From assembly GCA_036785375.1 (NCBI GenBank), contig JAWMAR010000070.1, forward strand, positions 3,844,001 through 3,908,000: a DNA stretch of 64,000 bases, written 5' to 3'. Below, piece after piece: positions 29,264 to 64,000 of this stretch; position 1 is the first letter of the stretch, and every line of letters begins with the position of its first letter. The stretch is from Leucoraja ocellata. Its lineage: Eukaryota. A model generated the notes under the pieces. The model ran no database searches. It was given only the letters and a program-made list of their open reading frames with translations, and was not told where the DNA came from. The position numbers and the translations under genes were made by a program.

Positions 29264-29569
29264 CGTCAGATACTTTGAGATGTACGTGAAACATTGCAGT
29301 AATTCCACATCTGTACCGTCCTGTATCTCCAATCTGAAGATCCTCCACAGTCAAAGTAAATATTCCTCGTGCCGGTATATCTGTGATTGACATTCTTCCA
29401 CTCCGTCCGCGTTGCCCATTCGTTTCCACCACTTCTGCACATTGGCGACTCTGCACACGGCACCAGTATTTTGTGTGTGAGCGGTACTCTGGTGCATAGT
29501 GACAATCGATTGTGATCGCTCTTCCCACAACTCCTCTTACATACGCCTTTCCCCACACTGCAGCTGAAA
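29264..29569 (-). CDS. Receptor A exon 2: V-type Ig domain, CD300/pIgR/TREM-like
   Basis: 306 nt, phase 1-1; ITIDCHY...KYWCRVQSRQC...DTGRYRCG with the family-diagnostic extra C-C' disulfide pair. Confidence 0.92.
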
Positions 29570-30649
29570 CTGAAGGAGGGAACTTTCAGAACTGAGAGGA
29601 ACTGAACTGTTTCATGAAAGTTGATACATTTTGAAGATTACATGAAAGAAAACTTAAATGGTTCCATGATGTGTCATTTTGCTTCACGGCCAATGTCTCC
29701 GGCCTGAAGTGCAGGCAGTGCTGTTATTGTACCAGTTGTGTCAGTGTTCTGTCCCCGGTAGTGAGGGAGCGCGGCAGTGCGGTACTGAGGGAGCGCGGCA
29801 GTGTTGCAGGAGCTGCTTTTCAACAGCCCAAGCGGTGTCCGGCCTCTCATCCGACAGAAATACCCCACTTTGCTATATCATTGGCGGAGCCACCGGCTGC
29901 GCCGCCAACATTCATCTCTCAACCGACACTGGGCCGGACCCGTGTTTAGATATTCACCGCCGCCATTGCCTTCAGAACGGCGAAGAGGAAACACTTTTTC
30001 ACACAGAGAGTTGTGAATCTGTGGAATTATATGCCTCAGAAGGTAGTGGAAGCCAATTATTTTGATGCTTACAATGGAGAATTAGATAGAGATGTTAGAT
30101 TGCGGAGTCGGGGGATATGGGGAGGCAGGAACCGGTTACTGATTGTGGATGATCAGCCATGATCACAGTGATTGGCGGGGCTGGCTCGAAGTGCGGAATG
30201 GCCTACTCCTGCACCTATTGCCTATTGTCTGTTCCTGGTGATGTCTGAACCTCTGTCCTTTGGTACAATTGTCTTGGAGTATATGCTCCAAATTTAGTCG
30301 CTATGTTATGCATATAAAGAATTCTTAGGGTTCAATTTGGCAATGTTGCAACAGTGCTTAAATTACTAACTTGGAGTCTGGAAATTCAGATGCGATCTCA
30401 GTTCCTACCATGATACATAGCGAGTTCGGATCCATTGTATTAAATATTTCTAAGACTGGGAAACGTATAGCAGCAATGGTGACCATGAAGCCAGGAAATT
30501 ATCACCCAACTCCATCTACCATTCCTGTCCAGACTTGTTTACAAGCGACTGCAGACCCCCCCCCCCACAACGAGCTTGGCTCTGAAGCGTCTTTCTGCAA
30601 TGGCCCAGAAAGGAAAAAAAAAAGAGAGATCAGTACAATAAATACTGGC

Positions 30650-36018: not shown

Positions 36019-39000
36019 TCATTCGTGGGTCGAGTGGCGAGGTTCAGACTCATCGCGTCTCTGCAAAAGACAATGTGAAGTCATCAGACTCATTGACAGT
36101 GGTAACAACGCTTTATTAACCCGACCACTCCCAACACATTGCTGTCCGGAAGATGGACTCTAAAGAACCCACACCGGGCACACAAATCCACCCTGCACAC
36201 GTACAACCTGACAAAACCTCGTGATATCATCCACATAGAGGTTTGGTTTAACTTCAGGATATGAAAACGCGCACGGTTTTTATTTCTATCAATGGACAGG
36301 ACATTTGAAAGCGTTAATGGAAACCGTTTGGAAACATTCGGTGAAGAGAAGTGATTGCTTTGGTCAGAGGGTAGCGAATCTATGGATGTCATTACCACAG
36401 GAGGCTGTGGAGGCCAAGCCAATTCACACCTGAGTTGATGCCTGTTCCGCTGAGCTACTTCGGCATTTTTGTATCTGTCTAAATCAATTGGTATTTTTAA
36501 GGCGGAGATTTTCATATTCTTGATAAATGAGGATGTCAAGAGTCATCGGGAGATGGCAGGAGAATGGGATCGAGTGGGAAGCCGTGATTGGGGGCCGATT
36601 AGATATGATGGGCTGAATGGCCTAATTCTGCTTCTATAATTCATGAGCACGATGACAATGACGCCTACCTTCGAGCCTCTAGTGAGCACCGCGGTTGAGA
36701 TACTCCAGATCACAAGCAGGAGAAAGACCATCCAGCGCCCCACTTTCCATGAGATGTAATTGGGCAAAGGGCAAGAGATACAGAATCACTGGGAGAAAAC
36801 GAGACGGTTTATCTTCGAAACATTTATCTGTTATTTGCTTCATAATCTTGGTGAAGTGGAGCGGGGCGAAGCAGCAGAGTCAATGGAGATCAGTTTGGAG
36901 AAAGAACGGGGTTTGGACTTGGGGGGGGGGGGTAGTTATGATCACCAATTACTGACGTCATTGCTGGAGCATGGCTACAAGGGAATGAGAGATTACGCGG
37001 TTAAATGGATTCGGAGAAGAGAGAGAAATAAGTTATGAGATGGAGCAGTGAATACAGTGAATACAGAGTAGATGCTGGTGAAACAGCGGGATAGGCAACA
37101 TTTCTGGAGGGAAGGAATGCGTGGTTTTCGGATACAGACCCTTCTTCAGACTGGGAGTCACGGGGGAGAGAAACTGGGGATGTGGAAAGAAACAAAGAAC
37201 AGTGTAATATCCTGGAAGAAAGAAATGCAGCCGCAAGGAAGATTATAATAAAACGCATATCAGAATCAGAATCATACTTTATTCGCCAAGTATGTTCTGC
37301 AACATACGATAGGAACAATAAACCAGATCAATTCTAATGGTGCAAGGGAGATGGGGCAACAAATATGGAAACAGATGAGGCCAATGAATAAAACAAATTA
37401 AAAATGATAATGCTTAATCTCACATCCTCGATATTACTTGGATTAACGCGGCAGGTCTGTGGATATAGGAATCGTGTTCGAAAATTCGGTGAAAGGTTCG
37501 CTCCTAACGGCGTGGCTTTAGTTAACGTTCTTATTATATCCTAAGCCCCTCTCCCACCCACCCGCTCTGCACAGATCCATTCGCTCTCCTGCACGCACGG
37601 GGCAATTTACAACTGGCACATCTATGGGAGCTGGGAGGAAACTGGAGCACTTATATGAAATCAACACGATTAAAGGCAAAACATGCAGACCACACACAGA
37701 CAGCACCTAATGGACCAGGGTCGTGGCGTTGTGAGGCTGTGATTCTTATCGGCTGTGCCACTGTGCATTCAGATCAATACTCTCACGGCATTCAATGCCA
37801 GTGAAAGGAAGGCACACGTTTCCCCCAATTAAAGAATTCCCAATCAAAACACCAGCAATTTGTTCATTGTAACTTTCATTGGAAACAGAGCGGTTTACCT
37901 TGCAGAGTAATTGGATGTTATCAAATTTTCACAAGAACATTCATGACCTGGTGGAACAAGGAAATAAAAGTCAGTTTCACTGCTTTTCACTCCTCCCTGT
38001 GAACGCGTGGGTTTTCTCCATTCTAAATTCCAGAGTATACAAGCGCAGCCGCTCCATTCAATCAACATATGACAGTCCCCCGCCTTCTCCGGAATTGTCC
38101 TTGTGAACCTACGCTGCACTCCCATCAATAGCAAGAAGGTCCTTCCTCAAATTTGGAGTTCAAAGCTGCACACAATAATCTAGGTGTGGTCTCACTAGTG
38201 CCATGTGCAACTTCAGAAGGACCTCTTTGCTCCTGTACTCAACTCCTCTTATTATTAAGGTCAACATGCCACTAGCTGTCTTCACTGCCTGCTGTACCTG
38301 CATGCTTACTTTCAGTGAGTGATGAACAAGGACACCCCAGATCTCTTTGTACTTCCCCTTTTCCCAACCTGACACCATTCAGATAATAATCTGCCTTCCT
38401 GCTTTTGCTACTAAAGTGGCCAACCTCACATTTATCCACATTAAACTTCATCCACCATGCATCTAGCCACTCACTCAACCAATCACCCACTCACCACTCG
38501 CTCACTCACCACCCACCTCCAGGTCCCTTACCGGAGAGCGTTACGAGCGTGAAAACGCACACCACCAGATCCGGGGACAATTTCTTCACAGCTGTTATCA
38601 GGCATCTGAATCATCCTACCACATCCAGAGATCTGTCCTGAACTCCCATCTACCACTTTGTTGACCTTCGGACTACCCTTGATCGGACTTTGCTGGCCTT
38701 ACCTTACACTAAACGCTATTTCCCATTAATGTACCTATGCACTGTAAGGGGATCGACTGTAATCATGTATCTGGCAGGTTAGCACGCAACAAAAAGCTTT
38801 TCTCTGTAACTCTGTACACGTGACAATAAACTGAATTTGAATTTCAGCACGATTGGGCCGCGGATCCGAGAGCGGATGGAGAGAGAGTTGGGAGTGGGTG
38901 GATAGAGCGAGGACAGTGGTTCAGTCTCAGACTCCGGGGAATTGTTGGGTTTACGACAGAGTTGAGTGGGACAAATGCAGGGAGTATTTGAACTGACACA

Positions 39001-39405
39001 ATGAGACCACAATCCTGACTTCCACCTCAGTTGTAAACACATGTTGTTAGCGTAGAGTTAACTTCCTGGTGATGTTAGAACCTCTGTTCTTCTGTCCAGG
39101 TGTCTTGGAGTATCTGCTCCAAATTAATTTGGTATGTTATGCCTATAAACCTCCATCATGATGCAATTAGACCAAGTGTTAACAGTGGTTAAACTCCGAA
39201 CATTGTCTAGATATTCAAATGTGATTTCAGATCCATCACCACAATGCACTGAGTTCCATCTCGCTCATTACATGTCTACACACACTTAACCATCTCTGCT
39301 GTAGAAAGGGTGCACGGGACCCCAACTAACATTGATCATTGGAATATCAGGATCTGGCTTTCACTCACCCGGCAGCGAGGCGATGAGAAGAATGGGAATC
39401 CACAT
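36019..39405 (-). pseudogene. Receptor B: pseudogenised activating-type paralog (leader 39369-39405, stalk-1 37899-37947, stalk-2 37438-37503, TM 36669-36759, tail 36019-36060)
   Basis: Leader MWIPILLIASLP, but no Ig exon before the stalk; TAA at 37443-37445 where A has CAA; TM acceptor is AA instead of AG; TM YISWKVGRWMVFLLLVIWSISTAVL; tail RRDESEPRHSTHE*. Confidence 0.75.
37990..38490 (-). mobile_element. CR1 LINE fragment lying where the Ig exons of copy B would be
   Basis: WWMKFNVDKCEV, LHMALVRPHLDYCVQL. Confidence 0.85.
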
Positions 39406-42400
39406 TGTTTTATCCACAGTGACAAAACCAGCAATTGTATGTATGTCGCTCAGCTCTGATACAATCTCAAATAGCAATTACAAGAAGGGAACAGGACGTC
39501 AGATCCTGAACCACAGCGAGCCAGCAGCAGCTCGACACTTTACAGTGTGAATGGCTCTGGGTTATATTTAACAAATGGTTAGGTCAGATGATCACGAAAA
39601 CAGGCCCTTCTCCCCAACGAGTGAGACCAATATGCTCATCTAAGTTAATCAAATTTGCCTACGCCCGGCCATATCTCCCCAAATCTTCCCTATCCATGGA
39701 CCTGTCCAAGTGCCCGTTACATGTAGTTATTGCATCTGCTTCAACCACTTCGTCAAGTGTGATTTATCCATAAAGATGGAGCGGCGGCCCTCTCTGTACT
39801 CGGAGTCTGTTAGCACTGAACAATGGGGGAAATAATGATAGACAAAAAATGCAGGGGCAACTCTGCGGGCCAGGCAGCACCCCTGGAGAAAGTGGATAGG
39901 TGACGTTTCGGGTCGGGACCTCTTGTGTAAACAATTAAACTATGGTTAAAGTATGACATTTAGAAGAGTAGAAACGTCTAAGATGTGTACACTTCCGGAT
40001 CATTCCCTCTTGATGATTCTTTAAGTGGACCGGCAGATCAAAAATATAATCATTGGAACTTTTTTTCGCATATTACTGTTGACAAGGGACAAAACAGGAA
40101 GCTGGCGTTAGAATGTAGGGGATTTTCGTCTGAAACATAGACACATAGAAATTAGATGCAGGAGTAGGCCATTCGGCCCTTCGAGCCTGCACCGCCATTC
40201 AATATGATCATGGCTGATCATCCAACTCAGTATCCCGTACCTGCCTTCTCTCCATACCCCCTGATCCCCTTAGCCACAAGGGCCACATCTAACTCCCTCT
40301 TAAATATAGCCAATGAACTGGCCTCAACTACCCTCTGTAGCAGAGAGTTCCAGAGATTCACCACTCTCTGTGTGAAGTCAGCTAAAGTTAATTGGAGTTT
40401 GACCCTCTTCTCATTGCTTCAACTATTCAATTCAAACTTTGAAACACTATTGTTATGATATTCATGTTTTGAAAAAGACAATTAATGGTGTAGTGGACTG
40501 TGAAGAAGTTTGTCTAGAATTACCACAGGATGGAGATCAGCTGGGAAAGCGGGATGTGGAATATAACTGACATGTGTAATGTAACTCAAACAAGGGCAAA
40601 GTGATACACTTAGTGAAGTTAAAGCAAGGATGAATATGCACGGTGAATAGAATTGGCAACTTGTGTACGTTGCCATTCAGAGCTACTAAATTATCAGAGT
40701 TGCGGTCATGTACATTCCATTGGCTGACTGTACATCTGCTTGCAACGATTTAATTCTGTAGGCAACTAGTTATTTTATAATATAACCTAATATCTGCTGC
40801 GGGCTATCGTTCTGGGTGTGTTACTTTCAGGGGAACAGTGCAGTTTATTCGGGTTGTGAACATCTGTGGCAATGTTGTGCATCACGTGGTATAGGTGTAA
40901 CACACTGATGTGTCCGCCACTGATGTTAGCTGAGCGTTGACGGCCCTTAGTAAAGGATTTTGTGTTCAGAGCTATTTCCTGTTTACTTGCCCAACTAAAA
41001 CACTGCAGAGAGGAACCGACGATGCAGCAAAACAATTTAATTCTGTCTTCATTCGCCATTGACCCATGACATCTGCAAACACTGCTCAGCAATCAGTGTT
41101 ACACCGAGCTGCTCGCAAGATGCGGTTCAGAGATACGAATCTACACGAATATTCGAACCTTGTTTCAGCAGCGCGAGCAAAGTGTCAGCACTGCAGAACA
41201 ATTCAGTGTAAAGAAAGAAATGACTGTTTGATCATATTAGATTAAATTACATTCCAAGTCAGCACCTGCCATTAAAAACAACAATGGCATCGAACCGAAA
41301 TGTCACCCATTCTTTCCTTCCAGTGATGCTGCCTATCCCGCTGAATTGCTCCAGTATTTTGTGTCTATGTGTGGCATCTCAGACCGTTTATCTCTCGCTA
41401 TCTTTTAGGCAAATTAGGATGTCATGTAGTGGGGAAACGCTGAACGAGCCAGGCAACAAATATCTCTGGCTATTCAGCACCCCTCGGATATCCCTGACCT
41501 GGGGGTTTCTGATTTCAAAGCAACCCCTGGTCTCATTTCCTCGTCTCCCCGCTTACTGCTCTTTCAAGCTGCAACTCAACCAGTTTGTTCTGCACAAGAA
41601 TGGACTTTCCACTAGTTTAGTTTAGGATATAGCGCGGAAACAGGCCCTTCGGCCCACCGAGTCCACATGATCCCGTTGCGCCACCGTGGCCATTGTGTAA
41701 ACTAGTTTAGTTTAGTTTAGTTTAGTGGGCCGAAGTGCCTATTTCCACGCTGCAGCCATAAACTAATCTGACGGGAGCAATATCACTTGAGAGGAGTATT
41801 GCTTGGGATGAAACGTTAGGTATGGGGAGGGGTTGAATAGGGATTTTATAAAATTCCATGCAGAACAAGTGAGGAACAGGGAACCCATTAAAGGTGTGCA
41901 AAACTTTGAGCAGCAAAGATAGGGTATTTTTGGAACGTTTTCCACGGCAGATGTGTGCAAAAGTGAAGAACATTTGGTTAAGTTAAGGAGCAGGATGTTT
42001 CAAGGGGAACAATAAATATGTTTAAACCTAGAAGATGGAGGTAACTGAATTGCTACAATGGACGAGGTGCTGGTAAATGAGATTAGTGTCGATGGTACTG
42101 AATGGTCAACATTAACACAGTGGAACAAATCTGATACCGGCGTCCAGGAGTTAACGATGACCACATTTACTGCTAATATTCATTCCCTTATCGTATCTGA
42201 GTGCGCATCCTGCGGAGATGATGGTGGGAAAGTAAAAGTGCTTGGACTGATAATACTGCAGGAGTAGGCCATTAGGCCCTTTGAGCCTGCACCGCCATTC
42301 AATATGATCATGGCTGATCATCTAACTCAGTATCCCGTAGCTGCCTTCTCTCCATACCCCCTGATCCCTTTAGCCACAAGGGCCACATTTAACTCCCTCT

Positions 42401-42947: not shown

Positions 42948-43265
42948 CTTCAGATACTTGGAGATGTTCTTGAAATGTTGGTTCGCCAGGTGTAGTAATT
43001 CCACATCTGTACCATCCTGTATCTCCAGAGTGAAGATCCTCCACAGTCACAGTAAATATTCCTCGTGCCGGGTTATCTGTGATTGACACTCTTCCGTTCT
43101 GTCCATCCTTCCCATTTGTTTCCACTACATGTGTACACTGGCGACTTGTCCCGTTGCACCAGTATTTTGTGTGTGAGCGGTACACTGCTGCATAGTGACA
43201 ATCGATTGTGATCGCTCTTCCCACAACCCCTCTTACATCGCTCTCAGCCCACAGTGCACCTGAAA
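42948..43265 (-). CDS. Orphan intact V-type Ig exon (CD300/pIgR-like), closest to the exon at 58267-58584
   Basis: 318 nt, phase 1-1, intact AG/GT; VSGALWAESDVRG...KYWCNGTSRQC...DTGWYRCG; no leader or C2 exon adjacent. Confidence 0.75.
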
Positions 43266-45850: not shown

Positions 45851-46859
45851 TTTAACCGCTATAGTTGAGTACCGCTATAGTTGAGAAGAGGTCCTGTAGC
45901 AATGCTGCTAAGACCAGAATTTCCAAATCGAACTTTCTTCTGCTACAGAAAATGTGATTTTTGGAAGTGTTTCTGTGGTCATGACAGTTGAATCTTCTTG
46001 GTTTAGGATCTCACCCAGAAATTTGCAGTTCAGGCAGTGATGTACTCTACCAGTTGGCACTGTGGTGCTCGTAGGTCATGTGCTCATTTACTGGGGAGGG
46101 ACGGTGTAGACGGGAAATTTTCACGTGGACTCCGGGCTTGTTTTCAGAAAAAAATGTTTTATTACGAATTGACCAACTTTGGTTACACATGTCCTGGGGC
46201 TGATGCCCTCAGATACAAGGCATTCAGTGCCTTTTACACAACCACATCTACATTACCTTCCTCTCCTAACTTTACCTTGCATTCTCAGTGAGTAGAAAAG
46301 ATAAAGGAATGCATGTATATTACTCTGTTGTACTGCTGCAAGTTGTATGACAATACTGCATGACAATAAAACACACTTGACTCACTTTTTGCCTTCTAAT
46401 ATGCTATAAAATCTGTGAATATTTCTGCAGTTCCACGCTACATTACTCCCCTCCATCTCCACTTGGCTGTGCAGTATCTAGGGATGGGCTCACTTAGGGT
46501 CATTTTATTTGCAACTGGTCACTGAGGCAGGTAAAATCCAGTCTAGGCCAATTTTCAGTGAGACCACCTTACCCAGGTTTGAGGATCATCTTACATCTTG
46601 GGCTTATCTGCCTTAGCCCATTATCCACTTGAACCCATGTTCTTGCTTGATCCATTGCCCCTTTACGGACTTGAACCCACAATATTTTGGCCCAGAGACA
46701 ATGGGGTGTGGTGTGCTTAGACAGCCACTTGCAATTGATTATAATGGGATTGTTTAATTATTATCTTAATTTACACAGACCCAACGCTTCTTCGTCTGAA
46801 TGTTCAATTAACCTATCCTTTGTCTATTATAACGATGTTTATGTTACTTTGTCTCTGAC

Positions 46860-49045: not shown

Positions 49046-49312
49046 CTAAGAAACGACAGAGGCATAGGTTGACTCAGTGTTCTCTGGAGTCATAGTAGAG
49101 TGGGGTTTCCGAATGCCCTTTGGGCAGTTGCGGTGAAAATTGACATCTGCGTAGACGACAGCGTGTTCAGCCGCATGCTGCCTTGATCTCAACTTCCTTT
49201 GACAATTCACCACTGCATACGCGATTCCACCTTCATTGTTATCCAAATGGTCACCTGCCCTGTTGTTTTCCAGATTTGAATCAACGTGGTTCCCTTCCAT
49301 CACTGCCATTTC
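49046..49312 (-). CDS. Receptor C last exon: cytoplasmic tail with three ITIMs
   Basis: Phase-0 acceptor tatttcag; IAYAVV, VVYADV and STYASV then TAG. Confidence 0.88.
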   Translation of the reverse strand, partial: EMAVMEGNHVDSNLENNRAGDHLDNNEGGIAYAVVNCQRKLRSRQHAAEHAVVYADVNFHRNCPKGIRKPHSTMTPENTESTYASVVS

Positions 49313-49679: not shown

Positions 49680-49726
49680 CTGGGTTTCATCGTTGTCTTC
49701 ACCGTGTGATGTATTGTACTTGGATT
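49680..49726 (-). CDS. Receptor C cytoplasmic mini-exon
   Basis: 47 nt, phase 1 to 0, ttttccag/gtaaca; ESKYNTSHGEDNDETQ; bridges the TM and ITIM exons in frame. Confidence 0.75.
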
Positions 49727-50441: not shown

Positions 50442-51085
50442 TCATCCGGATGTTAGACTAACTGGTCTGTAATTCCCCGTTTTCTCTCTCGCTCTCTTTT
50501 TAAAAAGTGGGGTTACATTAGCTACCCTCCAATCCTCAGTAACTACTCCAGAATCTAAAGAGTTTTGAAAAATTATCACTAATGCATCCACAATTTCTTG
50601 GGCTACTTCCTTAAGTACTCTGGGATGCAGCCTCCTATCTTGCCCAGGGAATTTATCGGCCTTTAATCCATTCAATTTACCAAACACCACTTCCCGGCTA
50701 ATCTGGATTTCACTCAGTTCCTCCATCTCATTTGACCCCTGGTCCCCTGCTATTTCCGGCAGATTATTTATGTCTTCCTTAGTGAAGACAGAACCAAAGT
50801 AGTTATTCAATTGGTCTGCCATGTCCTTGTCCCCCATGATCAATTCATCTGTTTCTGACTGCAAGGGACCTACATTTGTTTTAACTAATTTTTTTCTCTT
50901 CACATATCTATAAACACTTTTGCGGTCAGTTTTTATGTTCCCTGACAGTTTTCTTTCATAATCTATTTTCCCTTTCCTAATTAAGCCCTTTGTCCTCCTC
51001 TGTGGACTCTGAATTTCTCCCTCTCCTCATGTATGCTGCTTTTTCTGGCTAATTGGTATGCTTATTCTTTTGTTTTGATACTATC
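50442..51085 (-). mobile_element. CR1 LINE internal fragment
   Basis: LNNYFGSVFTKED...DWRVANVTPLFKK...NYRPVSLTS. Confidence 0.9.
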
Positions 51086-51701: not shown

Positions 51702-51790
51702 CCTTGGTTTCACGCTTTCGGTACCAAAAGAAGGTAATGATGAGAATCAGGAGAAGCACAGTGACACCAGACCCAACTATGTAAATGATC
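51702..51790 (-). CDS. Receptor C transmembrane exon (uncharged)
   Basis: 89 nt, phase 2 to 1; IIYIVGSGVTVLLLILIITFFWYRKRETK; strong polypyrimidine acceptor and GTGAGT donor. Confidence 0.88.
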
Positions 51791-54225: not shown

Positions 54226-54274
54226 CTTGATGACGCATTGGATCCTTTCGAAGTTTCACAAGAATATTCAGGTC
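54226..54274 (-). CDS. Receptor C stalk exon
   Basis: 49 nt, phase 1 to 2; GPEYSCETSKGSNASSR; same size and phase as 37899-37947. Confidence 0.8.
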
Positions 54275-55638
54275 CTGTTAGAACAAGGAAATAAAAATCA
54301 GTTTCACTGATTTTCACTTGCAGTTGAACAAGAGAGCATGCTTGTCCGATGTAAGGCGTTTATAGATTTAATAGACAGGGCAATGTTTCGCCAGTGTAAT
54401 TTGCAGCAAATGGGAGATGCTTGCACAACTCAGGTACAACTCAGGTCGCCAACATTAGGGCGGCACAGCGGTAGAGTTGCTGCATTACAGCGCCACAGAC
54501 CCGGGTTCAATCCTGACTACGGGTACAATCTGCACTGACTTCGTATGTTCTCCCTGTGACCGCGTGGGTTTTATTCAAATGCTCCGGTTTTCTCCCACAT
54601 TCTAAAGTCGTGCAGGTTTTGAGGTTAACTGCCTTCTGTAAATTGTCCCTAGTGAGTGGGATAGAATTGGTGCACCTGTTAAAGGCAGTTGCTTCCACCT
54701 GGATTTCTAAACCAAACTAAAGGAGGTAATTTCATGCGAGGGATAGTGCCTGGATAGATGGGGATTTTACTCCATATAGGAAAAGAAGGGGGAACCTACT
54801 ACCGGTGTGTAAAGCTACGAGGAACATAGATAGGGTATTTTGTGGGAAATCAGCACAGCAGATGTACGAAGAAGTGAAGAACATAGGGTTGGGTTAAGGA
54901 GTAGAATATTTGGAGGGTATCTGAGCAAGAAGTATTTTTAAACTTAGATAGTGGAAGCACTTGGATTGTCAACTCTGAGAAGATTGTGGATGAGGGGCTG
55001 GTAAAATGGATTAGTATCGATGGTACTGAATGGTCAACATTAACACAGTGGACCAAAGCTGATAGGAGTTAATTCTATGGGGTAACTGCGGCCACATTTA
55101 CTGATAATTCCTGTTCCCTTCCCATATTTGAGTGTCGGTCATGTGGAGATGACGGAAAGTGAAAGTGCTTGGACTGATGTCACTACAAACCTAGTTTAAA
55201 GCTGTGTAAACATAAGAAGAAGTTCTAGCCCGGAAGCTGGCCTACACCAGCACTGGGGAATCTGTGGCTGGAGCCCAGCAACCAAGTATTGACAAATGGG
55301 CCATAATTCCATCATTTTAATCTTGATAACTTAATTAAATAATGTGCATGGATATCAGGGTGTCGGGGCTACGGGGAGAGGGCAGGAGAATGGGGTGAAG
55401 AGGGGAAGATACATCAGCCATGATTGAATGGTCTATTTCTGCTTCTATCACGTGATCCTATGAACCACCCCACCCCCACTTCCCCTTCTTCTCCCCATTC
55501 CCTTCACTACTTATAATTTGTTTGGTTGTTTTGTTGTTTGTCTTTTGCACAAAAGTCCGCGAGCATTGCCACTTTCATTTCACTGCACATCTCGTATGTG
55601 TATGTGACAAATAAACTTGACTTGACTTGACTACTTAC

Positions 55639-55959
55639 CAGTGCCGTTGATTTTCACCAGGAAACTGCAGGGCACGTCACTGCTGGAGATGGACACGTTG
55701 ACCATTTCACTGGATTTTGTTCCATTATTATTTGAGGTTGTGCAATAATATTGATGGTGTTGGTGTTTGAAGGATTGACAATGTAGATCCAGGGTATTGT
55801 TGTCTGAGATCTTTGAATCCCCAGATGGGGTATTTTCATACCAGCTGTAGTTAATGGGAAGGGATCCCCGGACCGACTCACAGGACACTGTCACTGAGCC
55901 CCCGAGACAGGAGACATTGGCTGGTGACAGAAACCCAAGCACAGGAACAGACACGGGTT
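55639..55959 (-). CDS. Receptor C membrane-proximal C2/I-type Ig exon
   Basis: 321 nt, phase 1-1; EPVSVPVLGFLSPANVSCLGG...SCES...YSWY...YYCTTSN. Confidence 0.9.
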
Positions 55960-56864
55960 CTGTGGGAAAGGAGCAAACAGTCAGACACTGAGTGAACATC
56001 TGAAAATCAAACACTCGCCAATATCCACCATCTCTGTATCTTAGCCAGAGCCGCCAGGTTGGAATCTAACGCATCCATCTACTTAGAGTCATAGAGGCAT
56101 ATAGTGTAGAAGCAGGCCAACATGTCCATCCACACTAGTTCCACCTGCCCTTGCTTAGCCCATAAGCTTCCAAACGCAAGAGACTGTGCATTTACTCGAT
56201 CTATTCGTCGCGTGATTTTGTAGCTGCCGTAAGATCATCCCTCATCCTCCTGCTCTCCCAGAAATTAAGTCCTAGTCCGCTCAATCCCTCCCTGGAGTTC
56301 AGGCACTCAAGTCATGGCAGCATCATTGTAAATCTTTTCTGCACCCAATCTTACTTGATAGCATCTTTCCTATAACATGGTGATGAATACTGACCACAGA
56401 GCGGACATATCATCAGACAATCTTCGATTCTCTTTTCCATTTCAGGAATTGCCAGCAGGAAAAAGGGAGCATTGTTTATTTAACTGTCGGACCCATCCCA
56501 TCTACATAGATTCGTAGAGTCATACAGTAGAAACAGGCCCTTCGGCCTAACTTGCCCGCGCTGACCAACACGCCCAATCTACACTAGTTTCACCTGTCCT
56601 TTCTTGGCCCTTAACCCTCTAAACATATCCTATTCATGTAACTGTCCAATATTTTCTGAAATGTTACGATAGTACCAGCCATAACTACTTCCGTCAGCAT
56701 TTCGTTTCATGGACCTACCAACCTTTGTGTAAACACGTTACTCGCCAGGTTCCTGTTAAATCATTCCCCCCTGATATCAAAACTATGTCCTGCGGTTCTC
56801 GATTCCCCTACTCTGGGCGAAAGACTGTGTATTTATTCGATCTATTCCTCGCGTGATTTTTGTG

Positions 56865-57575
56865 ATTTAAAAAAAAAATTAATAAATATTTTTATTAGAA
56901 TCAATGTACAGTAGTATAAACCGTGTTTTAATATTACATTTAGTGTAAAACTTCTTGTTTTAAATTTATTAATAGAAAAGTAACAGAAGCAAAAAAGAGA
57001 AGAGAGAAAGTTAAGTAAAGTAGTGATATTGATAGTTCGAGAAAGAATAGATAGAAAGAACCCGTAAAGATATAAAGCCGTAAAAAATCCGTGACCCCCC
57101 CCCCTCCCCCGAAAATTAAATACATAAATTAGTAAATAGAAATAAAAAATAGAAAATAAAATAAAATAATAAGAAAACAAAACAGAAAAAGAATAAAAGG
57201 GAGAAGGGATATACCTGCTTCATGTCTTTCCACACCCCTCACCCAGTTCTGAAACAGTTAATTTCCAGGGATATGTTGGACCATGTACTTGGAATGTCGA
57301 TAAAAGGAGACCAAATCTTTAGGAATTGGTCTGCTTTACATGCTAGGACGAATCTCCTATCTTCGAGGTGTAACATTTCAGACATGCTTGAAATCCACAT
57401 TTGGGTTCGTTGTTCAAGAATTTGAGTATACGTTTTTTTGCTGTTATCAAGCCATGGTTAAGGAGAGAATTTTGGAACGAAATCAGCTTAGAGCCGGCTT
57501 CCATTGTTCCAAAAATAATCAATTCAGTGTTGGGGTCCAATTCTATTTTAAACTCGCAGGATTTTTTTACCTGCA
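56865..57575 (-). mobile_element. L1/Tx1-like LINE 3' end
   Basis: ORF2 C-terminal-like ELIIFG...LLNHGLITAKKRILKF and a T-rich 3'UTR; interrupts a CR1 fragment. Confidence 0.6.
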
Positions 57576-58266
57576 ATAAAATCACCCCTCATCCTCCTGC
57601 GCTCCAAGGAATAAAGCCCTAATCTGCTCAACCTCTCCCTGTATACCAGGCCCTCAAGTCATCGCAACATCCTTGTAAATCATCTCTGCTCCTTCTCCTC
57701 ACAATCCATTTACCAGATTTAGACATCTCTTTGTCTCTCCATCCTCCCAGCCGCCAGAAGAACCATGTCTGCCACTGTACCAGTACACAGCAGCACCATC
57801 TCTCTTTGTTTTACAATTCCAGCATCTGCAGTTAATCTTCTTTTAATCTGAAACTCTGCTTTTAATCTGAACATTCAAACACTTCATTAGTGCAACAGTA
57901 TCAACAATTTTTTAATTTCCTTGCATAAAATTGTTGATGGTGATACTGTTGCACTAATGAGGTGTGTGAATGGCGGTATTGTAGAATAGTGTGTAGGGAG
58001 CGAATGGGGAAGTGGAATAATATAGAACTAGTGTGACCGGTGATCGCTAGTTGGCGAGGATTGGGTGGGCCGAAGGATCCGTTTCCATGTTACATTTGTA
58101 AACTATTACTAAATATCCCGGTGAACATTTTTCTGTAAACTCTACAAACCGTTCACATCTTTTGTTTTATAAAACGGCGACCAGAACTGTGCACCAGACT
58201 CTCACCTAACAAATGTTTTGCCCGTTGCCAAAGTGGAGACATCGAGTCAATCACTGAGAAACCTAC

Positions 58267-58584
58267 CTTCAGATACTTGGAGATGTACTTTAAATGTTAG
58301 TTCGCCAGGTGTAGTAATTCCACATCTGTACCATCCTGTATCTCCAGAGTGAAGATCCTCCACAGTCACAGTAAATATTCCTCGTGCCGGGTTAACTGTG
58401 ATTGACACTCTTCCGCTCTGTCCATGTTTCCCATTTGTTTCCACTACATGTGGACACTGGCGACTTGTCTCACGACACCAGTATTTTGTGAGTGAGCGGT
58501 ACACTGCTGCATAGTGACAATCGATTGAGATCGCTCTTCCCACAATCCCTCGAACTTCGCTCTCTGCCCACAGTGCACCTGCAA
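58267..58584 (-). CDS. Receptor C V-type Ig exon
   Basis: 318 nt, phase 1-1; SIDCHY...KYWCRETSRQC...DTGWYRCG. Confidence 0.9.
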
Positions 58585-59638
58585 CTGAAGGAAAAATATT
58601 TCATAAATTGAAGAGCAAAATTAGCCTTTCACAAACATATACATTAGAGTATAATGTACAGGGGAGTCCGCCCACTCAATTTCTTAACTTTGCTGAATTC
58701 CACCTAGATTGCGATGAGAGACAGATACTATACACCGTCCCTCACCACCTGCACAGGTCGTTCCAAAGCGCTTCCCAGCCAATGTGGGTGTGAATGGTGA
58801 AGAATGATGCATTGAACACGGAGCCTCTTGCAATTGGAAGGCGCTGTCTAGGGAGTCTTGGTCAGTTGCTGCAGTGCATCGTGCAGATGGTGCAAACTGC
58901 TGCCGCTCTGCATCAGCGGGCGAGGTTGAGGATGGGGTGCCTATCATGCGCGACTCTGGAACATGACAAACCAAGCACAAGTGTTGGGCGAAATTGTAGC
59001 CTAGGCCAGTGCTTCTTAAACTGATGAATGGTTCACCCAAGGGCGAATAAAATTATTTTGGGGTAAATTAGTTAATTTATGTTTTTTGCTCATGTGACAA
59101 AATCAATTATCTATAAAATTATGCACAAAGGAAAATGCGATGATAATAACCAAAAGAACATAAGAACATTTAGTGGAGGGTGAATTAAATCTTGTATAAA
59201 GACTCAAGGGTGAATGACACTGTAATACTTTAAGAAGAACTGGCCTTGTATAAAATTGGTCTCGCTGATGTAAACCATTCACACTCTCTTCTGGTCTTCC
59301 AACTGAGAGTCTCCACACCTACAGGGACGTTCTTTTCAAAATTATCTTTGACAAAAGTAAGGGTTATACTTGATGGAGTGATGGCCAAGTAGATTCCAAT
59401 TTAATTTTGTGAGATTACTGGAGTTTTACACAAATTAACAGAACATGATCATGAAATTGTACATCCTTGGTTATAACTGATGATGGATCCAAACAGAATG
59501 AATTTGGTTTCTTTCTCTGTCTCAAAGCGCGGCAGCCAGAAAATAATTTTGATGGAATGCACTGAACCCGCAGGTATTTCTCTCATTTGCTGAAGTTTCT
59601 CACCACCTCCCAGGTGAAAGCAACAGGCAATCATTTAC

Positions 59639-59701
59639 CAGTCCCCCAAACAAACTCTCGCATTTTACACCATGAGCTCCCGGTGGCTGCAATGATGCCG
59701 T
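59639..59701 (-). CDS. Receptor C putative inter-domain linker exon
   Basis: 63 nt, phase 1-1, ttatttgcag/gtaaat; DGIIAATGSSWCKMREFVWGT; carries a Cys like the stalk exon. Confidence 0.45.
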
Positions 59702-59779
59702 CTGCAAATAACAAGAAATCCATGAACATCACCTCAAAGCGAATAGCAGCAGGTTCAGGGACACGAGAAGAACACACAC

Positions 59780-60100
59780 CTGCATTGGTGATTTCTGTCA
59801 CATAACTGCACGTTCCTGCTCCTTTGAAGACTTTCACGTTGAGTATTTCACTGGATTTTGTCCCACGATTATTTGAGGCTGTGCAGTAATATTGACGGTG
59901 TTGACCTTCGAGGATTTCACAACTCAGATCCAGTTGATTGCCAGACACGGTAGTTGAAACCCAATGCTCGTTCTTTTCAAACCATGTGTAATGGATGGGA
60001 AGGGATCCACGGACAGACTCACACGACACTGACACTGAGCCTCCGAGATGTGAGGCATTTGCTGGTGACAGATATCTGAGCACTGGAGCAGACATGGGTT
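59780..60100 (-). CDS. Receptor C distal C2/I-type Ig exon
   Basis: 321 nt, phase 1-1; EPMSAPVLRYL...SCESVRGSLPIHYTWF...YYCTASN. Confidence 0.88.
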
Positions 60101-60529
60101 CTGTGGGAATGGAGCAAGCATTCAGTCACCTGTACGAACAGTTAAAAACCAAACACGTGCTAAATCTCAGCAGCCCTTTATCTCAGCCCGAACCGTCCGG
60201 TTGACATCTCACCGGCTCATCTACATCTCTGTGAGTGTGCGAAGCCCAGAAACTGAAGAAGGTTAGAGTTATAGAGAACCGAAAGATGCCCATCACAACA
60301 GCTCATTCATGCCGACCAACATGTCTTTCTGGACCATTTCCATATGTCCACGTTTCTCCCTTATCACTGGCAATGATCCCAATCTACGCAAATATCAAAA
60401 AAAATATTTTAAATGCTGCTATTCTAACGGCCTTAACACCTTCCCCTGGCAGCAGGTTCCATATAAATATCACCCAATGTGTGGAAAATGTTGTCCCTCA
60501 GAACATATGTTGGGATGTTACGTCCCTTT

Positions 60530-61300
60530 AAGATAGACACAAAATACAGGAGTAACTCGGCGGATTAGGCAGCATCTTTCGAGAGAAGGAATGGGTGACG
60601 TTTCGAATCGTGACACTTCTTCAGCCTGAGAATCATGAGAAAGGGAGACAGAAGAGAAATGGAAGGGTACGGTGTGAAAACAAGTGATCAAAGGTGAAAA
60701 TGTTTTTTAAAAATGTAGAATGGATCATTGTCAGCTGAAGGGAAGGCATAGAATCAGTAAAATATAATCTGGAGGGCAGTGAAAATAATTGGAGGCTTCG
60801 GATGGGGCGGGATGGAGACAGGAGTAAAGCAAGGGTTACTTGAAGTTAGAGAAGTCAATATTCAAACCGCTGGGTTGTAAGCTGCCCAAGCGAAATATGA
60901 GGCACTGTTCCTCCAATTTGCTTTTGGCCTCACTCTGCAGGGGAGGAGGTCCGGGACAGAAAGATCAGTTTGGGAATGGGAGGGGGAATAAAGGTGTTTT
61001 GCAATCGGGATGTAGCGTAGGCCGAGGAACACTGTGCGGAATTGTTCAGCGAAACGATCGCCGAGCCTGCGTTGGGTCTCCCATCTACTGTATCCGCTTG
61101 TTCACACCTGGAACAACGGATATAGTAGATGAGGTTAGAAGAGATGCAAGTGAACCTCTGACTCACCCGGAAATACTGTTGGAGCCTTGGACGGAGTAGA
61201 AGCGGGATATATAGGAACTGGTGTTGCATCTCCTGCAGTTGTAGGGGAAGGTATCTGGGGACGGGGTGGGAAAGGACGAGTTGACCAGGGAGTTGCGGAG
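60530..61300 (-). mobile_element. Penelope-like element fragment (GIY-YIG)
   Basis: FRVSQRFTCISSNLIYYIRCSRC and a terminal repeat. Confidence 0.8.
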
Positions 61301-61597
61301 TCTGTCGGGTTATTAGTTTGAGTCGGACTGCAAACCTCTGGCAGGGTGACATTTCATACAGTTCAGAGGCAGGGAAATGTGCTGAGCATCCCACTTGAAG
61401 TGGGTGGCCGCTCAGTGGAACAGAGCCCGCACTGGGTGAGAGCAACATGAGTGGGGTTTCCCGACCCCCGCCCGTTCCCCGCAGGTCTCTGCACTGCTGC
61501 GGAGCCTCGGGATATCGGTGCTGCCCTGACCCTTCCCGGAGAGAACATAGATAAGGCATTTCAGTGGAGACGTCAAGTCAATCGCTGCGAAACGTAC

Positions 61598-61918
61598 CGT
61601 CAGATACTTGGAGATGTACGTTAAATATTGGACGGTCGCCAGGTGTAGTAATTCCACAGCTGTACCATCCTGTATCTTCAGAGTGAAGATCCTCCACAGT
61701 CACAGCAAATATTCTTAGTGCGGGTATATCTGTGATTGACACTCTTCCACTCCGTCCGTTTTGCCCATTTGTTTCCACTGAAACTCTACATGGGCGATTC
61801 CTCCCACGGCACCAGTATTTTGTGCGTGAGCGGTACGCTGCTGCATAGTGACAATCGATTGTGATCGCTCTTCCCACAACCCCTCTTACATCCCTCTCTG
61901 CCCACACTGCATCTGAAA
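61598..61918 (-). CDS. Receptor C V-type Ig exon
   Basis: 321 nt, phase 1-1; KYWCRGRNRPC...DTGWYSCG. Confidence 0.9.
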
Positions 61919-61970
61919 CTGAGGGGAGAAACTTTCAGATCAACCACAGATCAAACAACACTTGTTCCTC

Positions 61971-62150
61971 TGTGGAGCGAAGGAAATAGGCAACGTTTCG
62001 GGCCGAAACCCTTCTTCAGTCTGAAGAAGGGTTTCGGCCCGAAACGTTGCCTATTTCCTTCGCTCCATAGATGCTGCTGCACCCGCTGAGTTTCTCCAGC
62101 TTTTCTGTGTAACCTTCGATTCTCCAGCATCTGCAGTTCCCTCTTAAACA
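61971..62150. mobile_element. Palindromic Penelope-derived insertion with hammerhead cores on both strands
   Basis: Inverted arms around cttcttcag-t-ctgaagaag; direct repeat cttgttcctc at 61961-61970 and 62151-62160. Confidence 0.85.
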
Positions 62151-62269
62151 CTTGTTCCTCACCGGGATTATTAGTTTTGAGTCTGAATGCAAATTTCTGA
62201 CGGGTGACATTTCATACAGTTCAGAGGAAGAGAAATGCGCTGAGTATTCCACTTGAAGTGAAAAGTGAA

Positions 62270-62685
62270 GTTAAATCCCACTTTTCAAGAAAGGAGCGAG
62301 AGAAAACGGGAAATTACAGAGCAGTTAGCCTGACTTCGGTGCGGGAAAGATGCCGGAGTCAATTATTAAAGAGGTAATAATGGGGCATTTGCATAGCAGT
62401 AAAATAATTAGTCCAAGTCAGCATGGATTTATGAAAGGAAAATCATGCCTGACTAATCTTCTGGAATTTTTTGAGGAGGTGGCAAGTAAAATGGAGGAAG
62501 GTGCGCCAGTGAATGTAGTGTATCTAGACTTCAAGAAATCCTTTGATAAGGTTCCGCACGGGAGACTGGTGACTAAATTGAGAGCGCATGGAAGGGTGTT
62601 GACGTGGATAGGAAATTGGTTGGCAGACAGGAAGCAAAGAGTAGGAGTGAACGGGTCCTTTTCAGAATGGCGGGAAGTGGCGAGT
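62270..62685 (+). mobile_element. CR1 LINE RT fragment
   Basis: SQHGFMKGKSCLTNLLEFFE...VYLDFKKSFDKVPHGRL. Confidence 0.9.
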
Positions 62686-62721
62686 CAGTGGAGACGACAA
62701 GTCAATCGCTGCGAAACGTAC

Positions 62722-63042
62722 CGTCAGATACAAGGAGTTCTACGGTAAACATTGGGAGGCCGTTAGATGTTGCAATTCCACATCTGTACCACCCTGTATC
62801 GCCAGAGAGAAGATCCTCCACAGTCACAGTAAATATTCCTCGTGCCCGGTTATCTGTGATTGACACTCTTCCACTCCTTCCGTGTTGCCCAATTGTTTCC
62901 ACCATATCTGTACATTGGCGATTCTGCACACGGCACCAGTATTTTGTGTGTGAGCGGTACTCTGCTGCATAGTGACAATCGATTGTAAACACACTTCCCA
63001 CAACTGCTCTTACATACGGCTCTCCCCACACTGCACCTGAAA
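62722..63042 (-). CDS. Receptor C V-type Ig exon
   Basis: 321 nt, phase 1-1; KYWCRVQNRQC...DTGWYRCG. Confidence 0.9.
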
Positions 63043-63645
63043 CTGAAGGGGAGAAACTTTCAGATGGAGAGCAAATGAACAGTTTAGTGGAAATAGATAC
63101 ATTTTCAAGATTCCATGAAAGAAAACTTAAATAGTTCCATGATGTGTCATATTGCTTCACGGCCAATGTCTCCGGTCTGAAGTGCAGACAGTGCTGTTAT
63201 TGTACCAGTTGTGTCAGTGTTCTATCCCCGCGTCAGTGCAATTAGGGTTCACTTCCCACTCCAGATCCCTGAGCAGAAACTGGGCTGGGATCGCAGTGCG
63301 GTACTGAGGGAGCGCGGCAGTTTTGCAGGAGCTGCCTTTCAACAATCCCAGGCGGTGCCCGGCCTCTCACCCCACGAAAGACCCTACTTTGCTATTTCAT
63401 TGGCGGTGACAATTTCTTCACAGCAGTTATCAGGCATCTGAATCATCCTACCACGCCCAGAGATCTGTCCTGAACTCCCATCTACCTCTTTGACGACCCT
63501 CGGACCACCCTTGATCGTACTTTGCTGCCTTTACCTTACACTAAACGTTATTTAATATTCATGTATCTATGCACTGTAGGAGAATCGATTGTAATCCTGT
63601 ATTGTCTTTCTGCTGGAGACGTCAATCAATCGCTGCGAAACGTAC

Positions 63646-63966
63646 CGTCAGATACTTCGAGATGAACGTTAAATATTGGATGGTCGGCAGATGTTGTAAT
63701 TCCACATCTGTACCATCCTGTATCTCCATCCTGAAGATCGTCCACAGTCACAGTAAATATTCCTCGTGCCGGGTTATCTGTGATTGACACTCTTCCATTC
63801 CGTCCGTGTTGCTCATTTGTTTCCACCAAAACTGTACATTGGAGACTCCTCCCACGGCACCAGTATTTTGTGTGTGAGCGGTACTCTGCTGCATAGTAAC
63901 AATCGATTGTGGTCGCTCTTCCCACAACTCCTCTTACATCCCACTTTGCCCACAGTGCACCTGAAA
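63646..63966 (-). CDS. Receptor C V-type Ig exon (most 5' in window)
   Basis: 321 nt, phase 1-1; KYWCRGRSLQC...DTGWYRCG. Confidence 0.9.
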
Positions 63967-64000
63967 CTGAGGGGAGAAACTTTCAGCTGGAGAGAAAATG

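What the first reader, a model, noticed from the sequence alone, without database searches (positions are those of the whole stretch)
58267..63966. Tandem V exons that each keep the signal-peptide end: possible combinatorial V-exon choice
Seen: four intact V exons lie upstream of one TM/ITIM end with no leader or TM exon between them. Each starts with the residues that complete the signal peptide in gene A (VSGALWA, VSGAVWG, VSDAVWA, VAGALWA). All are phase 1-1, so any subset can be spliced in frame after one leader. Inference: this is either one receptor with six or more Ig domains (a pIgR-like polydomain), or a cassette system that picks or skips V exons to diversify ligand binding without recombination. 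The array may continue beyond the window.
Basis: partly seen in the sequence, partly recalled or inferred. Interest (0 to 1): 0.8.

Follow-up and report, generated by a model that had tools for sequence, protein, structure and literature searches.

The report
Multi-domain skate immune receptor gene
The four V exons are most likely consecutive domain exons of one inhibitory immune receptor of the known skate MDIR family rather than a new diversification system, but which of them a given transcript keeps is still untested.

Summary
On the minus strand lie four intact, phase 1-1 V exons: Va 63966-63646, Vb 63042-62722, Vc 61918-61598 and Vd 58584-58267. Two C2 exons are interleaved with them. A stalk exon, an uncharged transmembrane (TM) exon and a tail with three ITIM-like motifs follow. 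No leader or TM exon lies between the Ig exons.

The V exons are pIgR/CD300-type and the C2 exons FcRL5-type. Exon by exon, the gene is collinear with clearnose-skate Modular Domain Immune-type Receptor 3 (ABC86797.1) and with Amblyraja radiata 'pIgR-like' models. Those are leader-V-V-C2-V-C2-TM-ITIM; here Vc is one extra V.

The 'signal-peptide end' is not special: 123 of 145 internal V domains in relatives start the same way. So this is most likely one six-Ig MDIR-type inhibitory receptor made by exon duplication.

Cassette choice is neither shown nor excluded:
- RNA reads from four runs barely touched the exons, and no exon joint was listed.
- Exon lengths, intron lengths and splice sites give no means of enforcing a choice.
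- RefSeq isoforms in related rays do skip Ig exons.
- None of the 222 fetched proteins in which the V/C2 profiles found a domain is V-V-V-C2-V-C2.

First-stage notes report the same V-V-V-C-V-C order elsewhere in this genome (s1-884808, s1-885042); I did not check them. Verdict: new member of a known kind.

The parts
63646..63966 (-). Va: first V exon seen (321 nt, phase 1-1), starts VSGALWA. Its leader must lie beyond the window end.
   Evidence: 84.5% to domain 1 of A. radiata P0164. 93% to domain 7 of L. erinacea P0152. Groups with that domain in the tree at 99/92.
62722..63042 (-). Vb: second V exon (321 nt, phase 1-1), starts VSGAVWG.
   Evidence: 83% to domain 2 of P0164. Its upstream flank is homologous to the leader-V intron of gene A, with no leader in it. 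Family profile score 171, within the range 157-205.
61598..61918 (-). Vc: third V exon (321 nt, phase 1-1), starts VSDAVWA. It is the extra exon relative to the MDIR3 and A. radiata architecture.
   Evidence: It has no counterpart in P0164. It sits on a lone unresolved branch of length 0.21. Family profile score 185. Its 20-nt flanks are identical to Va's while the exon is 88.8% identical.
59780..60100 (-). C2-1: FcRL-type C2 Ig exon (321 nt, phase 1-1).
   Evidence: PDB FCRL5 9loc_A, E 2.1e-46. Pfam Ig_2, Ig_3 and Ig_C17orf99. 92% to P0164 and 99% to P0152. Bounds.
58267..58584 (-). Vd: fourth V exon (318 nt, phase 1-1), starts VAGALWA. It is of the type that follows a C2 domain in relatives.
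   Evidence: 86% to MDIR3 domain 4 and 82% to P0164 domain 4. Lies in a clade of V domains that follow a C2 domain.
55639..55959 (-). C2-2: second C2 exon (321 nt, phase 1-1). Reading through its donor gives two codons and then a stop.
   Evidence: 92% to P0164 and 87% to MDIR3. P0152 ends at this read-through.
54226..54274 (-). Stalk exon (49 nt, phase 1 to phase 2), GPEYSCETSKGSNASS.
   Evidence: It matches the stalk of P0164 and MDIR3 as read.
51702..51790 (-). Transmembrane exon with an uncharged helix followed by YRKRETK.
   Evidence: Hydropathy scan. 93% to P0164 residues 641-670. Bounds.
49680..49726 (-). Short cytoplasmic exon (ESKYNTSHGEDNDETQ).
49046..49312 (-). Last coding exon. It carries three ITIM-like motifs (IAYAVV, VVYADV, STYASV) and the stop codon at 49048-49046.
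   Evidence: 89% to the tail of P0164 and 73% to the tail of MDIR3.

Best explanation
The region is the ectodomain part of one inhibitory receptor gene of the skate MDIR family, which RefSeq calls 'polymeric immunoglobulin receptor-like'.

The exon order is: leader (outside the window), Va, Vb, Vc, C2-1, Vd, C2-2, stalk, uncharged TM, and a tail with three ITIM-like motifs.

The V exons arose by duplication of a whole V exon with part of its upstream intron but without the leader exon. Each copy therefore carries the exon's 5' end. In first position that end finishes the signal peptide. In an internal position it is simply the link into the next domain.

All Ig exons are phase 1-1 with equally good splice sites, so they should be spliced in series. 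That gives a six-Ig (V-V-V-C2-V-C2) type I membrane protein that signals through its ITIMs. The V domains diversify between paralogous exons and genes, not by choice within a transcript.

Shown: the exon anatomy, the family, the collinearity, and the absence of leader and TM exons inside the array. Inferred: serial inclusion of all three N-terminal V exons, and inhibitory signalling.
For: - Family: V exons match pIgR and CD300 and Pfam V-set. C2 exons match FCRL5 and CD22.
- Named relatives: MDIR3 (P0166 = ABC86797.1) and MDIR5.
- The MDIR3 sequence reads leader-V-V-C2-V-C2-stalk-TM-ITIM, and its second V starts VSGAVWA directly after the first V.
- tblastn of A. radiata P0164 on the window places D1 on Va (84.5%), D2 on Vb (83%), C2 on C2-1 (92%), V on Vd (82%), C2 on C2-2 (92%), TM (93%) and tail (89%), all in the same order.
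- 123 of 145 internal V domains of relatives start with a GALWA-like motif.
- 131 of 222 fetched proteins have adjacent V domains. One ray protein is V-V-V-C2.
- No leader or TM exon lies in the array.
- Vb's flank is homologous to a leader-V intron but holds no leader.
- Splice signals are conserved: the 20-nt flanks of Va and Vc are 100% identical against 88.8% in the exon.
- All six V exons in the window score inside the family profile range.
- dN/dS is 1.3-2.4 among Va, Vb, Vc and V29. The Vc exon is more diverged from V29 than its intron is (86.6% against 95.5%, Fisher p 0.0008). This is what V domains in use under diversifying selection would show.
Against: - No transcript evidence from this locus. 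In four RNA runs the exons had depth of about 1 or less, Vb had 0, and no exon-exon joint was listed.
- 0 of 222 fetched proteins are V-V-V-C2-V-C2. The recurrent form is V-V-C2-V-C2 (6 of 222).
- The closest model, L. erinacea P0152, joins the Va-like domain directly to the C2-1-like domain.
- Vc has no close counterpart in the relatives fetched.
- dN/dS near or above 1 also fits relaxed constraint.
- V43, a V exon for which I found no leader upstream or C2 exon downstream, is just as intact. Intactness alone therefore does not prove use.
- The leader was not seen, because it lies outside the window.
Confidence: 0.6

Rival explanations
1. Same single gene, but the N-terminal V exons are used alternatively. 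Transcripts would keep the family's usual five-domain form (V-V-C2-V-C2) with either Vb or Vc as second domain, or skip V exons in various combinations. One ITIM receptor gene would then give several binding ectodomains. The regulated, combinatorial version is the reader's cassette idea.
For: - All exons are in phase, so any subset stays in frame.
- The usual form in relatives is V-V-C2-V-C2 and none is V-V-V-C2-V-C2.
- P0152 joins a Va-like domain to a C2-1-like domain.
- Predicted isoforms in relatives change Ig-exon content. In H. akajei, X5 uses another leader and V and skips two V exons of X1. In R. longicauda, X2 lacks a C2 exon of X1.
- In the reads, Vb had depth 0 and Vc at most 0.12, while C2-1 and Vd reached about 1. 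These are a handful of reads.
Against: - I found none of the three means that I know (from recall) to enforce a choice. The exons are multiples of 3 nt, so double inclusion does not break the frame. The introns of 603 and 803 nt are too long for crowding. All sites are GT-AG.
- The deposited MDIR3 sequence carries two adjacent V domains together.
- The isoforms cited are predictions whose evidence I could not see, and some models in this family look like run-ons across neighbouring genes (P0152, P0001).
- The read counts are far too small to compare exons.
Confidence: 0.2
2. One or two of the tandem V exons (Vb and/or Vc) are unused relics of exon duplication that have not yet decayed. The real product would be a four- or five-Ig receptor.
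For: - V43, a V exon for which I found no leader upstream or C2 exon downstream, is fully intact and scores highest against the family profile. Intact but probably unused V exons therefore exist here.
- Vb departs at 4 columns that are at least 85% conserved.
- dN/dS around 1.3-1.8 has bootstrap shares of 0.83-0.93 and is not clearly above 1.
- No ortholog of Vb or Vc appears in the L. erinacea models fetched.
Against: - Vb and Vc lineages are older than the split from A. radiata. Vb pairs with P0164 domain 2 and Vc branches deeper. Both still keep an open frame, all cysteines, the family score and perfect splice flanks.
- The Vc exon is more diverged than its flanking intron (p 0.0008). Neutral decay would not give that.
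Confidence: 0.15
3. The V exons belong to separate small genes, each with its own unseen leader.
For: Single-V 'CMRF35-like' proteins exist in skates. Leader exons are short and easy to miss.
Against: - No leader-like sequence was found by three searches.
- There is no TM or tail exon in the array.
- The gaps are only 603 and 803 nt and are filled by intron homology and repeats.
- The C2-1 to Vd join matches the C2-to-V joins of MDIR3 and P0164.
Confidence: 0.03

Closest known systems
Modular domain immune-type receptor 3 (MDIR3) of the clearnose skate, ABC86797.1 / UniProt A0S0E9 (P0166)
   Same: - The same two domain kinds: a pIgR/CD300-type V and an FcRL-type C2.
- The same order from the second V onward (V-C2-V-C2).
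- The same stalk, uncharged TM and ITIM tail ending ...YASVVS.
- Internal V domains begin VSGA(L/V)WA.
- Exon-wise identity is 73-87%.
   Different: MDIR3 has two N-terminal V domains, while the window has three V exons (Vc is extra). The leader was not seen here. Expression of this locus is unproven.
Amblyraja radiata 'polymeric immunoglobulin receptor-like' models (P0164, P0165, P0167, P0170)
   Same: Collinear exon by exon with P0164 at 82-93%. All four are V-V-C2-V-C2-TM-ITIM.
   Different: They are predicted proteins with five Ig domains, and none has a Vc counterpart between the second V and the first C2.
Polymeric immunoglobulin receptor (pIgR)
   Same: It is the best solved-structure match of the V exons (7jg2_E, E 2.5e-51, four stretches). 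It also has serial V-type domains in one chain.
   Different: By recall, pIgR has V domains only (five in mammals, two in bony fish) and a transcytosis tail. Here C2 domains are interleaved and the tail carries ITIMs. From recall: some mammalian pIgR transcripts skip the exon for domains 2-3, a precedent for plain exon skipping.
CD300 / CMRF35-like molecules
   Same: The V-domain type matches (9z0m_A 1e-18, 2q87_A 2.6e-18). The genes also occur as paired activating and inhibitory forms in a cluster.
   Different: By recall, CD300 proteins have one V domain and no C2 domains.
Cassette-exon arrays with one exon chosen per transcript (Dscam-type; recalled)
   Same: Tandem, similar, in-frame exons that encode Ig domains.
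   Different: No enforcing mechanism was found here, there are only three candidate exons, and there is no transcript evidence.

Membership tests
MDIR (modular domain immune-type receptors, skate) | Ectodomain built from CD300/pIgR/TREM-like Ig domains | tested here: met
   PDB pIgR E 2.5e-51 and CD300-family E 1e-18. Pfam V-set on 5 of 5 V translations.
MDIR (modular domain immune-type receptors, skate) | Combined with FcR-homolog-like C2 domains in variable number and order | tested here: met
   C2-1 matches FCRL5, E 2.1e-46. The order here is V-V-V-C2-V-C2. Relatives show VCVC, VCVCVC and VVCVC.
MDIR (modular domain immune-type receptors, skate) | Direct sequence kinship with the named MDIR proteins | tested here: met
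   MDIR3 (ABC86797.1) and MDIR5 (ABC86800.1) were found and named. tblastn of MDIR3 on the window's exons gave 71-87% on its best-matching Ig exons, 81% on the TM and 73% on the tail. Vd groups with MDIR3 domain 4 in the tree.
MDIR (modular domain immune-type receptors, skate) | Type I membrane protein with either ITIMs or a charged TM | tested here: met
   Uncharged TM exon at 51790-51702 and three ITIM-like motifs in 49312-49046. The leader is outside the window and was not seen.
MDIR (modular domain immune-type receptors, skate) | Expressed as mRNA that carries the Ig exons in series | tested here: inconclusive
   Four RNA runs were laid. Exon depth was about 1 or less and no exon joint was listed.
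pIgR proper | V-type domains only, with a transcytosis tail and no ITIM (recalled definition) | tested here: not met
   Two FcRL-type C2 exons are interleaved and the tail has ITIM-like motifs.
pIgR proper | Binds J-chain-containing polymeric Ig | not testable with these tools
   This needs a binding assay.
CD300 | Single V domain ectodomain (recalled definition) | tested here: not met
   Six Ig exons lie before one TM exon.
Choice-type cassette exon array | A mechanism that stops two alternative exons being spliced together (frame shift with decay, a very short intron, incompatible splice-site types; recalled list) | tested here: not met
   Exons are 321 nt each, introns 603 and 803 nt, and all sites GT-AG with near-identical flanks. 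Competing RNA pairing with an upstream docking site could not be examined, because the upstream intron lies outside the window.
Choice-type cassette exon array | Transcripts that each carry one exon, or a varying subset, of the array | tested here: inconclusive
   Too few reads. Only predicted isoforms in other species are available.

The most novel reading that the evidence does not exclude
Vb and Vc are alternative second domains of one ITIM receptor. Transcripts would keep the family's five-domain form but choose, by cell type or state, which V exon sits in position 2, or would drop V exons in regulated combinations. A single germline gene of a cartilaginous fish would then yield several binding specificities by splicing alone.
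Probability: 0.08. Interest if true: 0.6.

Novelty: new member of a known kind. Interest (0 to 1): 0.27.

Why it matters
It places this locus in a receptor family that PMC3031540 cites to a 2006 paper on the clearnose skate. It also explains why each V exon looks as if it could follow a leader: that is inherited exon anatomy, not a splicing device.

The locus is a clean example of how these receptors gain domains, by duplicating a V exon with a piece of its intron. The V exons diverge faster than their introns, which points to selection on ligand binding.

If the three N-terminal V exons proved to be used alternatively, that would add splicing-based diversification to an innate receptor family of cartilaginous fish. 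Nothing here shows that yet.

Tried and rejected
1. RNA evidence.
- The look-up of sequencing runs listed no RNA holder, only raw-read RNA runs added by species label.
- Read laying on 58001-64000 with X6, X10, X13 and X9 put nearly all reads on repeats. Depth was 600-1300 at 62001-62200, and a short peak sat near 63597.
- Exon bins had depth 0 to about 1. The 15 joints shown (87 more not shown) were all inside the repeat.
- So there is no verdict on inclusion or skipping.

The other DNA collections hold no vertebrate genomes.

3. Short transcript-derived protein fragments that might span joins: a search with the Vb exon alone gave 3 proteins among 16 candidates, all single-V RefSeq models.

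4. A database protein with V-V-V-C2-V-C2: 0 of 222. A further search with P0164 added 2 new proteins, both too short. No row or 60 was marked as encoded by the window.

5. The primary MDIR paper (Cannon et al. 2006) and a 2010 review are not held. I saw only the reference entry and two descriptive passages in PMC3031540. Searches found no other held paper with the term MDIR. From those four searches alone, I found no paper in the held library on V-exon choice in this family. I asked for no supplements.

6. Rfam on 55000-64000 at gathering threshold gave 0 matches.

7. Separate genes with own leaders: rejected, see rivals.

8. Assembly artefact: rejected, because Va, Vb and Vc are only 84-89% identical to one another.

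9. I searched and folded no joined spliced model.

Full report
WHAT IS THERE

The window is vertebrate DNA with interspersed repeats. Its protein relatives are all from skates, rays and sharks.

On the minus strand between 64.0 and 49.0 kb lie ten coding exons:

| Exon | Coordinates | Length / note |
|---|---|---|
| Va | 63966-63646 | 321 nt |
| Vb | 63042-62722 | 321 nt |
| Vc | 61918-61598 | 321 nt |
| C2-1 | 60100-59780 | 321 nt |
| Vd | 58584-58267 | 318 nt |
| C2-2 | 55959-55639 | 321 nt |
| stalk | 54274-54226 | 49 nt |
| TM | 51790-51702 | uncharged helix |
| cyt1 | 49726-49680 | short cytoplasmic exon |
| last exon | 49312-49046 | three ITIM-like motifs and the stop |

- The ITIM-like motifs are IAYAVV, VVYADV and STYASV.
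- Every Ig exon has a pyrimidine tract plus AG, a GT donor and phase 1-1.
- The introns between Ig exons are 603, 803, 1497, 1195 and 2307 nt.

NO LEADER OR TM INSIDE THE ARRAY

- A scan for ATG, a hydrophobic run and a phase-1 donor found nothing in the Va-Vb, Vb-Vc or Vc-C2-1 gaps. It found six strings in the C2-1-Vd gap, none of which reappeared in the leader searches. The same scan did find the good leader of the neighbouring gene A at 32207-32159.
- blastn of that leader region found copies only at 39.2-39.7 kb and 22.3 kb.
- The first 30 residues of 13 family proteins matched, in their leader part, only at 39.4 and 32.2 kb. In the array only the part from VSGA... onward matched.
- Family TM exons matched only at 51.7, 36.7 and 26.3 kb.
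- A hydropathy scan of 55.7-64 kb gave five segments. I judged none exon-like: several are broken by stops, one lies in a LINE-like stretch, and one search found no family-TM match in the array.

WHAT KIND OF EXONS

- The V exons are Pfam V-set. Their best solved relatives are pIgR (E 2.5e-51, four stretches) and then CD300/CMRF35 molecules.
- The C2 exons match FCRL5 (E 2.1e-46) and CD22.
- A full-library phmmer search with Va gave 2725 proteins at E<=1e-3. The top hits are elasmobranch RefSeq proteins with two to five such V domains, named 'polymeric immunoglobulin receptor-like'.

THE FAMILY

A search with one of these proteins listed two clearnose-skate proteins:
- Modular domain immune-type receptor 3 (P0166, ABC86797.1, 701 aa)
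- Modular domain immune-type receptor 5 (P0186, ABC86800.1)

PMC3031540 gives the same accession for MDIR3. It describes MDIRs as multigene activating/inhibitory receptors similar to CD300, TREM, FCAR and pIgR. I saw passages only. The primary paper is not held. That it reports one to six Ig domains is my recollection only.

The MDIR3 sequence reads leader, V, V, C2, V, C2, stalk, uncharged TM, ITIM tail. Its second and third V domains start VSGAVWA and VSGALWA directly after the preceding domain. Four A. radiata models have the same build.

tblastn of A. radiata P0164 on the window gives a collinear map:

| P0164 part | Window exon | Identity |
|---|---|---|
| D1 | Va | 84.5% |
| D2 | Vb | 83% |
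| C2 | C2-1 | 92% |
| V | Vd | 82% |
| C2 | C2-2 | 92% |
| TM | TM exon | 93% |
| tail | last exon | 89% |

Vc has no counterpart. The locus is thus an MDIR3-type gene with one extra V exon.

THE 'SIGNAL-PEPTIDE END'

I cut 213 V domains from the fetched relatives. Of these, 123 of 145 internal ones and 57 of 68 first ones carry a GALWA-like motif in their first 12 residues. The motif is part of the exon wherever it sits.

Each V exon also has two AGs 6 nt apart. Predicted isoforms in two rays differ by exactly the two residues VS at such a site. MDIR3 keeps the VS.

HOW THE ARRAY AROSE

- Vb's upstream flank is homologous to the leader-V intron of gene A (62685-63406 against 29227-29887, 81%).
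- 63404-63602 matches the intron after a second leader copy (38572-38770, 88%).
- No leader sequence lies in between.

The unit that was copied is a V exon plus part of its intron.

In the tree:
- Va pairs with an L. erinacea domain (99/92).
- Vb pairs with A. radiata P0164 domain 2.
- Vd falls among V domains that follow a C2 domain.
- Vc is a lone, unresolved branch.

ARE THE EXONS IN USE?

In favour:
- All frames are open, the cysteines and framework are kept, and family profile scores are 171-189 against a family range of 157-205.
- The 20-nt flanks of Va and Vc are identical while the exons are 88.8% alike.
- Vc and V29 are 86.6% alike in the exon but 95.5% in 200 nt of intron (Fisher p 0.0008).
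- dN/dS is 1.3-2.4 among Va, Vb, Vc and V29, with bootstrap shares of dN>dS from 0.83 to 0.99.

Against:
- dN/dS near 1 also fits relaxed constraint.
- V43 (43265-42948) is a V exon for which I found no leader upstream or C2 exon downstream, yet it is the best-scoring V exon of all.

TRANSCRIPTS

No indexed run on record as RNA holds the stretch. I laid four raw-read RNA runs carrying the species label on 58001-64000.
- Depth on Vd was 0.2-1.1 and on C2-1 up to 1.2.
- In the bin that holds most of Va (63801-64000), depth was up to 0.5.
- In the one Vc bin free of the repeat, depth was at most 0.12.
- On Vb it was 0.
- All 15 listed joints lay in the repeat at 61.98-62.12 kb (87 more were not shown).

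This is too little to say anything about inclusion.

COMBINATORIAL CHOICE

Points that keep it open:
- 0 of 222 fetched proteins are V-V-V-C2-V-C2, while 6 are V-V-C2-V-C2 and one ray protein is V-V-V-C2.
- The nearest model, L. erinacea P0152, joins its Va-like domain (93%) straight to a C2-1-like domain (99%), followed by Vd-like and C2-2-like domains.
- H. akajei isoform X5 swaps the leader and first V and skips two V exons of X1.
- R. longicauda X2 lacks a C2 exon of X1.

Points against:
- These are predictions whose evidence I could not see.
- P0152 and P0001 look like run-ons across neighbouring genes.
- Exon lengths divisible by 3, introns of 603 and 803 nt, and uniform GT-AG sites leave none of the enforcing means I know from recall.
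- Plain exon skipping of in-phase Ig exons is ordinary in this superfamily (recalled).

EARLIER NOTES OF THE SCAN

These are unchecked leads:
- A six-Ig activating gene lies 6.3 kb beyond the window end (s1-885042).
- A tandem family with the very order V-V-V-C-V-C lies 72.6 kb beyond (s1-884808).

If true, the six-domain order is a repeated gene build in this genome, which favours serial inclusion.

VERDICT

This is one MDIR3-like inhibitory receptor gene whose tandem V exons are serial domain exons. It is a new member of a known family, with one extra V exon. Alternative use of Vb and Vc remains possible and is cheap to test.

I searched no joined spliced model. All searches were made exon by exon or with database proteins.

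Noticed in passing
window 42948-43265 (-), with 46572-46655 (-) and 39370-39426 (-): V43 is an intact V exon, 93% identical to Vd, and about 420 nt of upstream intron were copied with it. It lies after the ITIM gene's last exon. It sits between an exon-like stretch that is 96% identical to the N-terminus of A. radiata P0005 and a second leader copy. I found no leader upstream of it and no C2 exon downstream.
   Followed up: partly
window 36022-39426 (-): A second leader copy (VDKTMWIPILLIASLP, its first ATG lost) is followed by a stalk-like piece at 37993-37901. Then come an activating-type TM exon (36761-36669, with K and R in the helix) and a short tail (36063-36022). There is no Ig exon between them, so this looks like a gene remnant or a donor of alternative ends.
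   Followed up: no
window 61969-62150: A hairpin-forming repeat has many copies at 9.6-14.5 kb of the window. It drew 600-1300-fold RNA read depth in all four runs, with many back-joined and strand-switching reads. Rfam at gathering threshold found no family in 55-64 kb.
   Followed up: partly
window 62274-62700 and 50445-51026 (-): Reverse-transcriptase-like open stretches (LINE fragments) lie in the Vb-Vc intron and near the TM exon. RNA reads on 62.2-62.8 kb differ from the window at many places, so they come from other copies.
   Followed up: no
window 55633-55641 (-): Reading through the C2-2 donor gives two codons and then a stop. The L. erinacea model P0152 ends in exactly this way, so a soluble form by intron retention is conceivable.
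   Followed up: no
acceptors of all six V exons (for example window 63967-63975): Each V exon has two AGs 6 nt apart. Predicted isoforms in two rays differ by the two residues VS that lie between them.
   Followed up: partly
proteins P0153 / P0169 (L. erinacea isoforms X1 / X2): The two isoforms share the first 328 residues exactly. They then continue into different C2, TM and tail sequences (86% and 79% identity), as if one 5' part were spliced to two neighbouring 3' units.
   Followed up: partly
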